Shown here piece after piece: positions 27,062 to 64,000 of a stretch of DNA of 64,000 bases. A program made the translations under genes and the position numbers. How positions within the stretch are numbered: the stretch's first letter is position 1; each line of letters starts with the position of its first letter. Source of the stretch: Diplonema japonicum (taxonomy: Eukaryota; Protista; Euglenozoa: Diplonemea); contig OZ025725.1 in assembly GCA_964019335.1 (NCBI GenBank), positions 396,156-460,155 of the forward strand. The letters are read 5' to 3'. The notes below the pieces were generated by a model. That model was not told the origin of the DNA, searched no databases, and saw only the letters and a list, made by a program, of their open reading frames with translations.

Positions 27062-28653
27062 ATGAAGTCCGTTGCGAGGGGGCTCTTGAGAGCGGCGCCG
27101 AAGTACAGCAGGTCGTATTCAGTGCCATGGCCTAATGTATGCATTTTTTTTTTTTAAAACAGAATTTAAAGAGAGAAAAAAAAAAAAAAGAAACACAGCA
27201 TGTGAACACCCCGCAAGACAACGAGAGAGTGCCGTGGGACTTCACGGAGGACAGCTACGTGAAGGTGAAAAAGATATTAGGTAAGTTCCCGCCGCTAAAC
27301 ACGCAAAGCGGGATCATGCCGCTGCTGCACTTGGCACAATGGCAGAACGGTGGCTGGATCCCAGTATCTGCAATGAACAAGATCGCCCAAATCTGCGAAG
27401 TGCCGCCTGTGAGGGTGTACGAAACAGTGACCTTCTACGCCATGTTCAACAGGAGGCCTGTAGGGGACTACCACGTGCAGTTCTGCGTGACGACGCCCTG
27501 CATGATTGTGGGCTCTGATGAATTAATACAAGCAGGTCTGAAGCACCTGGGGCTGGAGAGGTTCAACCAAACAACCCCTGATGGCAAGATCACCCTCGGG
27601 GAGATGGAGTGCATGGGCTGCTGTGTGAACGCGCCCATGATCGTCGTAAGCGATTACAGGTATTTTTTTAAAAAATAACTATTTATTAAATGAAAATAAG
27701 ATTGCATTATTTCACGCGTGGTGGCAGGGGGTTTAACGAGAGAGGATCTTACTTCACGAGCGTAGCGAGTGTAGTAATAATTTTGAGTTAAACCCGCCAC
27801 CACAAGTGAAGTAATGCATTTATTTTAATTTAATATGTTGTTTTATTTAATAAGAGCCGGGTAAAGGATGGGAGGTTACAAGAAGAAATCAAAACTGAGA
27901 GGCAGCAAAAAAGGTTGGGGGGTATTACAAGCTACAAGGGGATTTCAAGTTACCAGTTCTCGTTAGTTCTAACATTAATGTTGATGTCGAGGCTTATCCT
28001 GTGCATCGCTACCGCTGGAACCATCTGAGGTTGCATGTATGGTGGATGCGGGGGCCCACTGCAGAATCTTGATTCTGGGATGGGTTGAGCAGACTGACTA
28101 GCACCCCCGAGACGTGTAATCCTCCCCATCGCTTTAGGCTTTCTTCCCATAGTTTTCTGTGTTTCTAGGGAGTTTGGCTTAAAATAGGTGCAGGAGTGAC
28201 ATAATGTAACATTATATCACTCCTGTACATTATGTCACTCCTGGGCCTTATTTCTCTATAAGCTGGGAGTGAGTATATTGTTGAGCGTGATATAAAGTGA
28301 AATATTATTTTCACTCCCACCCTTGAAAACCCGGCTCGAATTAAATAAAAGAAGAAAAAAAAAAAATTTTTTTTTTGTAGCAACCCGCCCGAATTCTACT
28401 ACGACTACTATGAGGATCTCACCCCCGAGACCCTCTGCAATGTTCTCGATCACCTCCGTTCTGGAGAGCGTAGCAAGCTCCCCATCGGTTCGCAATGCGG
28501 CCGTCAGTTCTCCGCACCACTCGGCGGCAAGACTTCTCTGATCGAAACGCCTCCTGGTCCTTTCTGCAGGTGTGGTAAAAAAAAAAAAATGAAAATTTTC
28601 AAAAAAAAAAAAATTAAAGGGACCTTGATGCGCCGAAGGAAGAGGCTAAATGA
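27062..28653 (+). CDS. NDUFV2: NADH:ubiquinone oxidoreductase 24-kDa subunit (NuoE). Exons 27062-27136, 27199-27659, 28381-28569, 28620-28653
   Basis: IMPLLHLAQWQNGGW, TFYAMFNR, CVTTPC and ECMGCCVNAP ([2Fe-2S] ligands), YYEDLT. Arg/Ser-rich N-terminal presequence. Splicing restores the frame. Confidence 0.95.
27684..28350 (-). mobile_element. Non-autonomous hairpin+IR element (Crypton-like) inside NDUFV2 intron 2
   Basis: Hairpin 27684-27835 with ~50-nt arms and a central CACGAGCGTAGCGAGTG. IR at 27841-27874 / 28314-28350. Removing the element leaves a 54-nt intron, within the size range of the others. Confidence 0.75.
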
Positions 28654-61741: not shown

Positions 61742-61860
61742 GAACATGCTTGGCCCCTTGCTTTGGACATTTCAGTTCTTCTTTTTTTATTGTTTACAAA
61801 TCTCGTTTTCCGAGTAGCATCCAATCCCCTCCAACACAGTCCATTCTATTTGCAAAGAAA

Positions 61861-62084
61861 ATGGCGACACTAAAGATGCTTGGGCTGATGCTTGCGGCAG
61901 GGGCGGCAGGGCAGTCAGTGACAGATTGCCAGCGCTGCATCAACAGGAACGAGCCTTGCTACAAGTCCGGGTGGGCAGAGCCGTGAAGGTAGTCCTGTCC
62001 TTCGGGGGCGCCGGGATGGGGGGCTCTTGGGGCGGGCTGGACGACTGCTGGGAGTGCTACGGGAAGGAGGACTACCCAGCAGCT
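61861..62084 (+). pseudogene. 5' part of a secreted Cys-containing protein gene, frameshifted near 61970 and cut off by the ribozyme-headed insert
   Basis: Signal peptide MATLKMLGLMLAAGAAG, then CQRC..C. Coding-like sequence continues in another frame (VGRAVKVVLSF..DCWECYGKEDYPAA) up to 62084. Confidence 0.55.
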
Positions 62085-62157
62085 GGGGGACAAAATCCAA
62101 CTCACAGCCTTCACGTGGCGTCCCCTGTAAGTAAGCTTCGGCTGAAACTAATGTGAG
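62085..62157 (+). ncRNA. HDV-like self-cleaving ribozyme (CPEB3-like core)
   Basis: P1 GGGGGAC(62085-91)/GUCCCCU(62120-26) with G1-U wobble. P2 CUCACA(62101-06)/UGUGAG(62152-57). P3 GCC/GGC around L3 UUCACGU. P4 AGC-UUCG-GCU. J4/2 CUAA with the catalytic C at 62148. Confidence 0.88.
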
Positions 62158-62361
62158 AGGTACCCAAGCTGTGGTGTGTGTGTGTGTGTGTGAACCTTGC
62201 CGGGGCTAGATTTAGAGCGGGCCCTGTTACCCATTCGCCCTGTCCTTGGTAAGCCTTGATGGTCGGAGGGGGTAAGGTAGCTGGTGTGTGCGTGGTTCCC
62301 CCCTGTGCTGTGTATCCGCTTTCGTTGTGACCGTTGCTGAATACGAAGTAGAAAAAAAAAA
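62085..62361 (+). mobile_element. Ribozyme-headed SINE-like retroposon with (GT)n tract and A-tail
   Basis: Begins exactly at ribozyme G1 where host coding sequence stops. GC-rich non-coding body ending in an A-run at 62352. TSD not identified. Confidence 0.6.
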
Positions 62362-62716
62362 GTAAACAAAACAAAAAAAAGAAAGCAACAACAAAAAAAT
62401 GAAAAGAGGTTTTTTTTTAATTCAAAGTATCTTTTTGTTTTTGATGTTGGCAGGCACTAAAACAACCTTCATACGCTAACCACATCAAAATCAAAATCTA
62501 TATCTTGGACTAAAAAAAAAACACCCACTCTTCGGAGTTAAGGGAGCTTTTTGTGCGACTCCCCCTATTTTTTGGGCAGCACCTATCTATACCTTTCCTT
62601 TTCCTTTTCCTTTTCCATTTTCCTTTACTATATTTTCTATACCTTTATTTTATACCTTGTACCTTAGTTTTAATTAAAATATTTTTAATAAATTTTTTTT
62701 TTTTTTTTTTTCAACA

Positions 62717-64000
62717 GTGGATGCAGCAGACGGGGGAGTGACGGCCAACCTGAAGAAGATGGACAAAGTGATGCGGACGGCGTGGTCGGACATCTTCTGC
62801 GCACGAACACCAGAAGACGAGCCGCAGTTCGACGAGTTCCAGAGACGGTATGGTGAGCACATCAAGAGCAACCCGATGGCACACGCCCCCATCGACGCCA
62901 AGCTGCTGAAAGAGGTGATCGGTAAGAAAGCGGACAAGGGGGCATGCGGCGTGGACGGCTGGCGGATTGGTGAGTTGAAGCGCCTGCCGGCTCCGATCCT
63001 ACAAGCGTTTGCGGACCTCTTCAACTTGATAGAGGAGACGGGCGAATGGCCGATGCAGGTCACGACGGCACTCGTATCCCTCATCCCAAAGGGGGAAGGA
63101 ACGGCACCTCTGGATCACCGACCGATCACAGTGACCAGTACCATTTACCGGCTGTGGGCAAGTGCACGACTGGTGCAGGTACTGAAATGGCAGGAGAGGT
63201 GGATCACACCACGACAACATGGTTTCAGGCCTAAACACAGCACGACCTCGGCGCTGATTGACTTATGCACGAAGCTAGAACTGGCACTGGTGGAGGACGA
63301 GCCGCTAGAAGGACTTGCATTGGACTTCAGGAAGTGCTTCGACCTGGTCCCGCAACAATTGTCGCACGAACTGATGCTGGCCCTGGGACTAGACCCAGCA
63401 ATCGCACGAGCACTCCAAGGAATGTACGGGCAGATCTCGAGGAGATTCAAGTTCCCCATAGGAATAGGGGCCACCTTTAAAGCAACGAATGGGATACTCC
63501 AGGGGTGCCCGCTGTCGGTGATCATTATAAACGCCTTACTGGCGGTGATGATCAGGACAATCGAGAAGGAAGCACCTGGAACGGAGGTTCTGTCCTATGC
63601 AGATGACACGTACCTTCTGGCAGAGTTGGAGAAGACCTTGCAGGCTGCGGTAAACGGAACTTTGGAGTTCTGCGGACTCACTGGGATGAAGCTTAACCCG
63701 GAGAAAACGGTAGCGTTTGGCACGAAGAAGGGCTTCCGGTCAAAAGTGCTGGTGATAGGACAGTAACACAGAAAGGGAGAGAGGTCGCAGTCCCCTATAG
63801 AACAGTGACGTCGTTCAAGGCACTGGGCGTGATGGTGTTCACGAACAGGACAGGAACGACGTGGAACGAGCCAGCGACGGAAGCGGCCAACAAGCTAGAC
63901 CGGCTGGGAGGGACAAGCCTGTCCTTCGAAACAAAAGGATACCTGATTGGAACATCGGTCTTGCCGTCGTGCCTCTACAGCAGCCCGTTCTCCCCTCCGA
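62717..64000 (+). mobile_element. Non-LTR retrotransposon reverse transcriptase, 5'-truncated, frameshift near 63755-63780, continues past window end
   Basis: ACGVDGW, LIPKG, HRPITV, QHGFRP, LDFRKCFD, GILQGCPLS and YADD, then SFKALGV in a shifted frame. Confidence 0.92.

What the first reader, a model, noticed from the sequence alone, without database searches (positions are those of the whole stretch)
62085..62157. Intact HDV-like self-cleaving ribozyme on the transcribed strand, with a CPEB3-like core
Seen: the nested double pseudoknot elements occur in the right order within 73 nt: 7-bp P1 with G1-U wobble, 6-bp P2, 3-bp P3 with 7-nt L3 UUCACGU, a single C-G P1.1 (C62112-G62127), a short UUCG-capped P4 and J4/2 CUAA. 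Known: HDV-like ribozymes process the 5' ends of non-LTR retroelements (R2, trypanosomatid L1Tc/ingi/SIDER signature), and the mammalian CPEB3 ribozyme has the same GGGGG start, UUCACGU loop and CCCCUGU segment. Inference: it cleaves 5' of G62085 and, being on the + strand, would also cut the co-directional host transcript. I do not know of such a ribozyme described in diplonemids. The likeness to CPEB3 is probably convergence on a small motif.
Basis: partly seen in the sequence, partly recalled or inferred. Interest (0 to 1): 0.9.

Follow-up and report, generated by a model that had tools for sequence, protein, structure and literature searches.

The report
HDV-like ribozyme heading short retroposons
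A 73-base RNA motif with the fold of the hepatitis-delta-type self-cutting ribozyme forms the exact first bases of two families of short mobile elements in this protist genome, a known trick of such elements seen here in a lineage where it has not been described.

Summary

Rfam puts no family over its threshold, but the three best sub-threshold hits are all HDV-like.

The context is the stronger evidence:
- The motif is the first base of a roughly 0.3-0.5 kb non-coding, A-tailed repeat (family 1). It has 8 near-identical copies and 7 different upstream flanks.
- A second family of about 0.24-0.8 kb resembles family 1 only from the cleavage site to the last base of P2.
- Between the families, three P1 pairs changed on both sides with pairing kept. 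The element's first base moved by 1 nt, as the P1 register predicts.

Best reading: a self-cleaving ribozyme that frees SINE-like retroposon RNA from read-through transcripts of a + strand polycistron. This is the role known for R2, RTE and L1Tc/SIDER.

Not shown: catalysis, and which LINE moves these elements. The neighbouring LINE reverse-transcriptase fragment is a separate, 5'-truncated insertion.

Verdict: a new member of a known kind. The scan's own unchecked notes name HDV-like heads at many other places in this genome.

The parts
62085..62157 (+). HDV-like ribozyme module (73 nt). Predicted scission is 5' of G62085.
   Evidence: Pairs verified. It is the only descriptor hit in the window. 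The top three Rfam sub-threshold hits are HDV-like. All 8 family-1 copies are identical over this stretch.
62085..62091 (+). P1 5' strand, GGGGGAC. Pairs with 62120-62126 (GTCCCCT). G62085.U62126 is the wobble at the cleavage site.
   Evidence: Family 2 has GGGAGGT/ACCTCCT, so three pairs changed on both sides.
62101..62106 (+). P2 5' strand, CTCACA. Pairs with 62152-62157 (TGTGAG). This is the pseudoknot helix.
   Evidence: It is sequence-conserved, with one C-to-T change that keeps a G.U pair (L038).
62107..62119 (+). P3 (GCC/GGC) closing L3 TTCACGT. C62112 is the proposed P1.1 partner of G62127.
   Evidence: L3 is identical to the Rfam CPEB3 consensus. Many family-2 copies have CACGT changed to CACAT.
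62127..62143 (+). J1/4 (GTAAGTA, starting with the P1.1 base G62127) and the minimal P4 (AGC-TTCG-GCT, 62134-62143).
   Evidence: The MFE fold recovers P1, P3 and P4.
62148..62151 (+). J4/2, CTAA. C62148 is in the catalytic-cytosine position. Family 2 has CTAA or CCAA.
   Evidence: The C is kept in every full-length copy.
62085..62406 (+). Family-1 SINE-like non-coding element, minimal extent: ribozyme head, (GT)n at about 62173-62192, body, and an A-rich tail at about 62340-62406. Most copies stay alike further on, to 62531-62610.
   Evidence: Copy L032 ends at 62406.
61861..62092 (+). 5' fragment of a GH18-like gene family, cut by the insertion. The last 8 nt (GGGGGACA against GGTGGACA in the paralogues) are microhomology with the element's first bases.
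   Evidence: alignment with paralogues L028 and L030; PF00704 on the L028 ORF.
62717..64000 (+). 5'-truncated copy of an APE-type LINE (reverse-transcriptase part), preceded by a T-run. It is a separate insertion and not part of the ribozyme element.
   Evidence: RVT_1. (100% identical to copies with a 1450-aa ORF). (Exo_endo_phos plus RVT_1 in L068). (other family-1 copies do not run into it).

Best explanation
Window 62085-62157(+) is an HDV-like (nested double-pseudoknot) self-cleaving ribozyme. It forms the 5' head of a short, non-coding, A-tailed retroposon. The element has no promoter shown. It lies on the sense strand at the end of a + strand polycistron and inside a disrupted GH18-like gene.

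Proposed mechanism:
1. Read-through transcription produces a co-transcript.
2. The ribozyme folds and cuts 5' of G62085, using C62148 in J4/2 as the general acid/base. This frees an RNA whose first base is G62085.
3. A LINE reverse transcriptase acting in trans copies that RNA into new sites, so every full-length copy starts at the same G.

Shown here: the fold elements, the coincidence of the repeat boundary with the predicted cleavage site in two families, the module-limited conservation, the compensatory P1 changes, and the strand context.

Inferred: the catalysis itself, the co-transcriptional release, and mobilisation by one of the genome's many intact APE-type LINEs.
For: 1. All helices and junctions are present in the canonical order. 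It is the only descriptor hit in 128 kb, against 0.02 expected by chance.
2. The three best Rfam hits in E-value mode are HDV-like families. They span 62085-62160, 62085-62158 and 62074-62149.
3. The genome search finds 8 near-identical copies whose likeness starts at query base 45/46, which is window 62084/62085. Their upstream flanks are of seven different kinds.
4. About 20 further copies (family 2) resemble family 1 only over 62085/62092-62157. The likeness stops at the last base of P2, and the element bodies cannot be aligned.
5. Family 2 has P1 GGGAGGT/ACCTCCT against GGGGGAC/GUCCCCU. Three pairs changed on both sides with pairing kept. Its first base lies 1 nt further from the conserved core, as a 7-bp P1 abutting P3 requires.
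6. The count of structure pairs gives 91.6% of cells paired, against 35-46% when the partners are slid. RNAalifold finds P1 on its own, with 3 covarying pairs.
7. The window junction shows 8-nt microhomology between the cut GH18-like target and the element's first bases. This is usual for 5' junctions of full-length non-LTR insertions (established knowledge).
8. All long ORFs of the window are on the + strand.
9. One contig of a run guessed to be RNA covers 62088-62339, which is just the element body. This is suggestive only.
10. Precedent: HDV-like ribozymes sit at the 5' end of R2, RTE, L1Tc, NARTc and SIDER. The review also names 'conserved downstream, different upstream' as their signature (PMC6765202, PMC3185411, PMC4035085).
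Against: - No cleavage assay exists, and no mapped 5'-OH end.
- No Rfam family reaches its gathering score; the best is 21.8 bits against 37.
- The covariation comes from essentially one split between two families, so few independent events stand behind it. P2, P3, P1.1 and P4 show only invariant or wobble changes.
- P1.1 is a single pair and P4 has only 3 bp.
- The nested MFE is no better than shuffles, z = -0.29. With this locus's own upstream flank the MFE prefers other pairings.
- A nested alternative pairs C62148 with G62131.
- No target-site duplication was identified, and no LINE carrying this head was found. The LINE 5' ends could not be fetched.
- The contigs laid cannot show RNA ends, and a DNA repeat boundary would break contigs at the same place.
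Confidence: 0.8

Rival explanations
1. The conserved 73/74-nt head is chiefly an internal promoter or a recognition site for reverse transcriptase. On this reading the common first base is a transcription start, and the HDV-like fold is incidental or no longer catalytic.
For: - The trypanosomatid Pr77 hallmark is both an internal promoter and an HDV-like ribozyme (PMC3383444, PMC4748587), so a head can serve transcription.
- A common 5' end alone fits a start site as well as a cut.
- The head is conserved in sequence well beyond what pairing requires.
Against: - A start site gives no reason for bases 1-7 to change together with bases 36-42 in three pairs, nor for the first base to shift by 1 nt in register with P1.
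- No tRNA-like, 5S or other RNA family matches the head.
- The two roles do not exclude each other.
Confidence: 0.1
2. A once-active ribozyme that is now a relic. The copies, this one included, are dead insertions carried along in duplicated subtelomeric blocks, and nothing is cleaved today.
For: - Seven of eight family-1 copies lie within 12 kb of a contig end, and four share the same downstream block.
- Most family-2 copies carry CACGT changed to CACAT in L3. That is the position equivalent to G25 of HDV, where changes are known to harm the HDV ribozyme (the G25 role is from established knowledge).
- Total copy number is low, at 37 model hits.
Against: - The eight family-1 ribozymes are 100% identical and pass the full descriptor, as do 4-5 family-2 copies.
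- Family-1 copies are 96-99% alike overall and have different 5' flanks, which points to recent insertions.
- The genome holds many intact LINE ORFs of 1372-2134 aa that could move them.
Confidence: 0.08
3. A chance match to a loose motif, with no structural meaning.
For: The descriptor is expected about 0.02 times per window, so about 20 times per genome. No Rfam gathering score is reached.
Against: Chance does not place the motif at the first base of two repeat families, limit the likeness between families to exactly the motif, or supply three compensatory pairs.
Confidence: 0.02

Closest known systems
L1Tc/NARTc/SIDER 5' HDV-like ribozyme (L1TcRz, within the Pr77 hallmark) of trypanosomatids
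   Same: Both are roughly 75-80-nt HDV-like ribozymes. Both are the very first bases of LINEs and of short non-autonomous retroposons. Both occur in a euglenozoan with polycistronic transcription. Both are thought to free the element RNA from co-transcripts (PMC3185411, PMC4035085).
   Different: Sequence homology to Pr77 was not tested, because no reference sequence was on hand. No autonomous LINE with this head was found here. Promoter activity is unknown. The host is a different euglenozoan lineage, diplonemid-like by its spliced leader. The L3 and J1/4 core is of the CPEB3 type.
Mammalian CPEB3 intronic ribozyme (Rfam RF00622)
   Same: Both start with GGGGG. Both have L3 UUCACGU and the CCCCUGU segment, which comprises P1 3' plus the single-pair P1.1 (alignment). 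Both have a weak, one-pair P1.1.
   Different: The match scores 16.9 bits against a gathering score of 35. P2, J1/2 and P4 are unrelated. Here the ribozyme is multi-copy and sits at a retroposon 5' end, whereas CPEB3 is a single conserved intronic locus in mammals.
drz-Agam-1 and the R2/RTE/baggins retrotransposon HDV-like ribozymes of insects and other metazoans
   Same: drz-agam-1 is the best Rfam hit: 21.8 bits, model positions 1-82, starting at 62085. It shares the ACAAAAUCC J1/2 stretch and J4/2 CUAA. The role is the same, namely 5' processing of non-LTR element RNA from a co-transcript (PMC6765202).
   Different: The match is below the gathering score of 37. P4 is far shorter here. The elements here are short and non-coding. 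The host is a protist.

Membership tests
HDV-like self-cleaving ribozymes (structural class) | Five pairing elements in the nested double-pseudoknot order: P1, P2, P3-L3-P3', P1', J1/4, P4, J4/2, P2'. | tested here: met
   Searches give the coordinates of every pair. The descriptor hits only at 62085.
HDV-like self-cleaving ribozymes (structural class) | Cleavage site directly 5' of a G that forms a G.U wobble as the first pair of P1. | tested here: met
   G62085.U62126. Family 2 also has G.U in this position (GU in 17 of 20 distinct rows, AU in 3).
HDV-like self-cleaving ribozymes (structural class) | Unpaired catalytic cytosine in J4/2 (C-N-R-A) just before the P2 3' strand. | tested here: met
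   C62148 within CTAA. The C is kept in all full-length copies, as CTAA or CCAA. Its catalytic role cannot be tested here.
HDV-like self-cleaving ribozymes (structural class) | P1.1 between L3 and J1/4, and an L3 with the U...G pair of positions equivalent to U20 and G25 of HDV. | tested here: met
   There is one C62112-G62127 pair, which never varies. L3 is UUCACGU, with U62110 and G62115. This is as minimal as in CPEB3. Many family-2 copies have G changed to A here.
HDV-like self-cleaving ribozymes (structural class) | Helices supported by covariation. | tested here: inconclusive
   P1 has 3 of 7 pairs changed on both sides. P2, P3 and P4 show only invariant pairs or wobble changes. The signal comes from one split between two families.
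HDV-like self-cleaving ribozymes (structural class) | Mg2+-dependent self-scission yielding a 5'-OH and a 2',3'-cyclic phosphate. | not testable with these tools
   This needs in vitro transcription and mutants. The reads on hand were contigs only.
Rfam HDV-like families (RF01787 drz-agam-1, RF02682 HDV-F-prausnitzii, RF00622 CPEB3) | Score at or above the family's gathering threshold. | tested here: not met
   Scores are 21.8 against 37, 19.6 against 44 and 16.9 against 35. It is not a member of any of these curated, lineage-specific families.
Retroposon 5'-processing ribozymes (R2, RTE, L1Tc/SIDER type) | The ribozyme's first base is the first base of a dispersed repeat, with conserved downstream and varying upstream sequence. 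| tested here: met
   (family 1, seven flank types). (family 2, at least six flank types).
Retroposon 5'-processing ribozymes (R2, RTE, L1Tc/SIDER type) | Retroposon hallmarks: an A-rich 3' tail, target-site duplications, and an autonomous RT-encoding partner. | tested here: inconclusive
   The A-rich tail at 62340-62406 is present. No target-site duplication was found. Many intact APE-type LINEs are in the genome, but none is linked to this head. Their 5' ends could not be fetched, and no shared 3' end was seen.
Trypanosomatid Pr77 hallmark | Sequence homology to the 77-nt L1Tc/ingi signature. | not tested
   No reference sequence was available through a tool, and I did not type one from memory.

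The most novel reading that the evidence does not exclude
The ribozyme-headed elements may be more than ordinary SINEs. They could be part of a chromosome-end system.
- Seven of eight family-1 copies lie within 12 kb of a contig end, and all seven point outward.
- Several are joined at varying points to a spliced-leader-like unit plus an AlkB-like ORF.
- Those contigs end in (GGGTTTGC)n arrays whose G-rich strand runs inward.

On this reading the ribozyme would define the 5' end of RNAs that build or repair subtelomeres. The perfect GUAAGU in J1/4 could also let the 42-nt cleaved head act as a splice-donor mini-exon.
Probability: 0.07. Interest if true: 0.8.

Novelty: new member of a known kind. 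Interest (0 to 1): 0.5.

Why it matters
- It extends ribozyme-headed non-LTR retroposons to a second major euglenozoan lineage, apparently diplonemid. These were known in metazoans and, among protists, in trypanosomatids.
- A common origin with the trypanosomatid Pr77/L1TcRz system therefore becomes testable.
- It gives a very small natural HDV-like ribozyme: 73 nt, a 3-bp UUCG-capped P4 and a one-pair P1.1. Its active-site core equals that of the mammalian CPEB3 ribozyme, which is useful for asking whether that core is a convergent minimal solution.
- For annotating this genome, it marks exact 5' ends of two SINE-like families and predicts sites where polycistronic transcripts are cut.

Tried and rejected
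- **Rfam at gathering thresholds:** no hit in the window.
- **drz-agam-1 over the whole genome:** uninformative, because only 56 of 7985 candidates were scored.
- **Metagenome scan for the P3-L3-P1'-J1/4 pattern:** one hit, at the very end of a gut-metagenome contig and without a P1 partner. I take it as chance and did not use it further.
- **Thermodynamics:** the nested MFE recovers P1, P3 and P4 but is no better than shuffles. With the locus's own flank, other folds win. This is neutral evidence for a pseudoknotted RNA.
- **Head derived from a tRNA or another known RNA:** rejected.
- **The adjacent RT ORF as part of the same element:** rejected. Other copies do not continue into it, and it is a 5'-truncated copy of an APE-type LINE.
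- **The ORF after other family-1 copies as LINE ORF1:** rejected. It is a 2OG-Fe(II) oxygenase.
- **Shared 3' ends between the SINE-like bodies and the LINE loci held:** none found.
no HDV-like match by Rfam or by my descriptor.
- **Taxon from the protein atlas:** uninformative.
- **RNA evidence:** only contigs were served. One contig of a run guessed to be RNA spans 62088-62339. That fits a cleaved, A-tailed RNA, but it fits a repeat-bounded DNA contig equally well.

Full report
**1. The observation**

I read 61800-62500 and indexed every proposed pair by script.
- P1 is G62085.T62126, followed by four G-C pairs, A62090-T62121 and C62091-G62120.
- P2 is CTCACA (62101-62106) with TGTGAG (62152-62157).
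- P3 is GCC (62107-62109) with GGC (62117-62119), closing L3 TTCACGT (62110-62116).
- C62112 can pair with G62127 to form P1.1.
- P4 is AGC-TTCG-GCT (62134-62143).
- J4/2 is CTAA (62148-62151), with C62148 where the catalytic cytosine of HDV-like ribozymes sits.

The order of these elements is that of the nested double pseudoknot.

**2. Is it more than chance?**

Rfam at gathering thresholds finds nothing in the window. In E-value mode on 451 bases, the three best hits are all HDV-like and all lie on this stretch:
- drz-agam-1: 21.8 bits, 62085-62160, full model.
- HDV-F-prausnitzii: 19.6 bits.
- CPEB3: 16.9 bits.

All three are below their thresholds of 37, 44 and 35 bits. Covariance models cannot score the pseudoknot, and these families are lineage-specific.

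I wrote a descriptor after seeing the motif. It hits once in both strands of the window, at 62085. It hits 50 times in 2411 random 128-kb sequences of the same dinucleotide make-up. That is about 0.02 per window, or roughly 20 chance hits in a 62.5-Mb genome. The motif alone therefore does not prove anything.

The nested MFE recovers P1, P3 and P4 but is no more stable than shuffles.

**3. Context decides**

A search of the window's own genome with 62040-62200 found 8 near-identical copies. Their likeness begins at query base 45/46, which is window 62084/62085, the predicted cleavage site. The bases upstream are of seven different kinds.

This family 1 stays alike to at least 62342. In most copies the likeness runs to 62406-62610, through a (GT)n run, a non-coding body and an A-rich tail at about 62340-62406.

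About 20 further copies form family 2, which measures about 237 nt in its shortest form and up to about 770 nt. They resemble family 1 only from 62085/62092 to 62157. The likeness ends at the last base of P2, and the bodies cannot be aligned. The conserved unit is therefore exactly the proposed ribozyme at both of its ends.

**4. Covariation**

Family 2 has P1 GGGAGGT/ACCTCCT where family 1 has GGGGGAC/GTCCCCT.
- Positions 4, 6 and 7 changed on both sides and still pair.
- The first pair stays G.U.
- The first base of family 2, defined by at least six different flanks, lies one base further from the conserved core than in family 1.
- That shift is what a 7-bp P1 abutting P3 demands, with J1/2 one base longer.

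I built a covariance model from 12 copies (R1). It finds 37 places in the genome at E no greater than 0.01, of which 23 score between 94.8 and 108.3 bits.

On the model-fitted alignment A2:
- 91.6% of cells pair in the full pseudoknotted structure, against 35-46% when the partners are slid by 1-3 columns.
- Three pairs have double changes, all of them in P1.
- P2, P3, P1.1 and P4 show only invariant or wobble changes.

RNAalifold, which was not told the structure, predicts P1 with the same three covarying pairs.

The caveat is that this signal is essentially one split between two families, and the alignment was fitted to the model.

Many family-2 copies carry CACGT changed to CACAT in L3, a CpG transition at the position equivalent to G25 of HDV. 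They are probably dead. By the descriptor, 8 family-1 copies and 4 family-2 copies are fully intact.

**5. The locus**

- *Strand.* All 19 ORFs of at least 350 aa in the window are on the + strand. The ribozyme is therefore on the sense strand, at the distal end of a polycistron.
- *Upstream gene.* Directly upstream, 61861-62092 is the 5' part of a GH18-like gene. Its paralogues continue past this point, and the L028 ORF matches PF00704. The insertion cut this gene.
- *Junction.* The target reads GGTGGACA where the element starts GGGGGACA. This 8-nt microhomology is typical of 5' junctions of full-length non-LTR insertions (established knowledge).
- *Downstream LINE.* After a T-run, 62717-64000 is the reverse-transcriptase part of a LINE. 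It is 100% identical to copies with a 1450-aa ORF that carries Exo_endo_phos and RVT_1. It is 5'-truncated, and other family-1 copies do not run into it. It is a separate insertion.
- *Possible helpers.* The genome holds many intact LINE ORFs of 1372 to 2134 aa, so there are plenty of candidate helpers. I could not link any of them to this head.

**6. RNA evidence**

Only assembled contigs were served.
- A run guessed to be RNA holds one 252-nt contig that covers 62088-62339. That runs from three bases after the predicted cut to the start of the A-rich tail.
- This fits a cleaved, A-tailed RNA. A DNA repeat boundary would break a contig at the same place, so I count it as suggestive only.
- In the deepest run, loose ends of mixed sequence pile up just before 62085. 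That is expected at a repeat boundary.

**7. Mechanism**

The best-supported reading is the known one for HDV-like ribozymes at the head of non-LTR elements (PMC6765202, PMC3185411, PMC4035085):
1. The element is transcribed as part of a longer RNA.
2. The ribozyme cuts itself free at its own first base.
3. The freed RNA is reverse-transcribed into new sites by a LINE enzyme.

The fold, the boundary, the module conservation and the strand are shown here. Catalysis, release and the helper are inferred.

The main rival is a head that is mainly an internal promoter, as Pr77 also is. This does not explain the compensatory changes or the register shift, but it can coexist with the ribozyme.

A relic reading is weakened by the identity of the eight family-1 heads and by the 96-99% likeness of copies that have different flanks.

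**8. Comparison and novelty**

- *Function.* The element works like L1TcRz/NARTc/SIDER of trypanosomatids and like the R2/RTE ribozymes of animals.
- *Rfam membership.* It is not a member of any curated Rfam HDV-like family by score.
- *CPEB3.* Its L3 and J1/4 core equals the CPEB3 consensus, but P2, J1/2 and P4 do not. Convergence on a minimal core is a fair reading.
- *Host.* The host looks euglenozoan. A 39-mer beside other copies, ACCAACGATTCTAAAGCTACAGTTTCTGTACTTTATTG, differs at two bases from the SL listed as 'Euglenozoa 14' in PMC3795323. From memory, that is the Diplonema SL.
- *Literature.* No paper in the library joins diplonemids with HDV-like or self-cleaving ribozymes. The D. papillatum genome paper does not mention ribozymes.
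- *Classification.* I class it as a new member of a known kind.
- *Other notes of this scan.* They list 110 entries with the words 'ribozyme HDV' in this genome, several of them at 5' ends of repeats and of LINEs. I did not check them. If they hold, this locus is one instance of a genome-wide habit.

**9. Limits**

The one metagenome contig fetched (L073, gut metagenome) was looked at over 120 bases only and then dropped.

Noticed in passing
L005/L056 1-160 (G000:C68 start), L035 8288-8566 (G000:C79 end), L051 1-330 (G000:C21 start): Contigs end in arrays of an 8-mer, (GGGTTTGC)n. At left ends the + strand reads the G-rich strand, and at right ends it reads the C-rich strand. The G-rich strand therefore runs 5'->3' inward, the opposite of canonical telomeres. 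Short copies of the 8-mer also lie inside L051.
   Followed up: partly
Genome places listed: Seven of eight family-1 copies lie within 12 kb of a contig end, and all seven point outward. About ten of 22 family-2 copies lie within 20 kb of an end, in mixed orientation. Contig ends make up roughly 5% of the assembly.
   Followed up: partly
L033 1514-1720, L035 1440-1700, L002, L005, L051 (minus strand) 1490-1400: A spliced-leader-like 39-mer followed by GT and an intron-like stretch is joined to ribozyme elements at different points. In four family-1 copies it leads into an AlkB-like 2OG-Fe(II) oxygenase ORF (PF13532). In L035 the piece CCAACGATTCTAAAAAAAAA is repeated before it. In L051 it ends in a T-run, like an SL RNA gene.
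   Followed up: partly
window 62127-62133, and the same place in all copies: J1/4 reads GUAAGUA after CCCCU, a near-perfect 5' splice-site sequence conserved in both families. Whether it is ever used as a donor is unknown.
   Followed up: no
L041, L044, L045, L039 and others, directly upstream of the family-2 first base: Family-2 copies are often preceded by a run of A. The 5'-truncated LINE in the window is preceded by a run of T at 62695-62716. This suggests insertion into A/T tracts.
   Followed up: no
window 61861-62092; paralogues in L028 and L030: A GH18-like (chitinase-type) gene family with many copies at about 83% identity. The window's copy is a 5' stump cut by the retroposon.
   Followed up: partly
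window 1-61466: All 19 ORFs of at least 350 aa are on the + strand, as in a single long polycistronic unit.
   Followed up: no
Only hairpin-type, miRNA-like sub-threshold hits appear, at about 27692-27827 and 28180-28255.
   Followed up: partly
L034 1585-1610: A run of about 25 C follows one family-1 copy. L032 has an A(38) run and then long T-runs after its copy.
   Followed up: no
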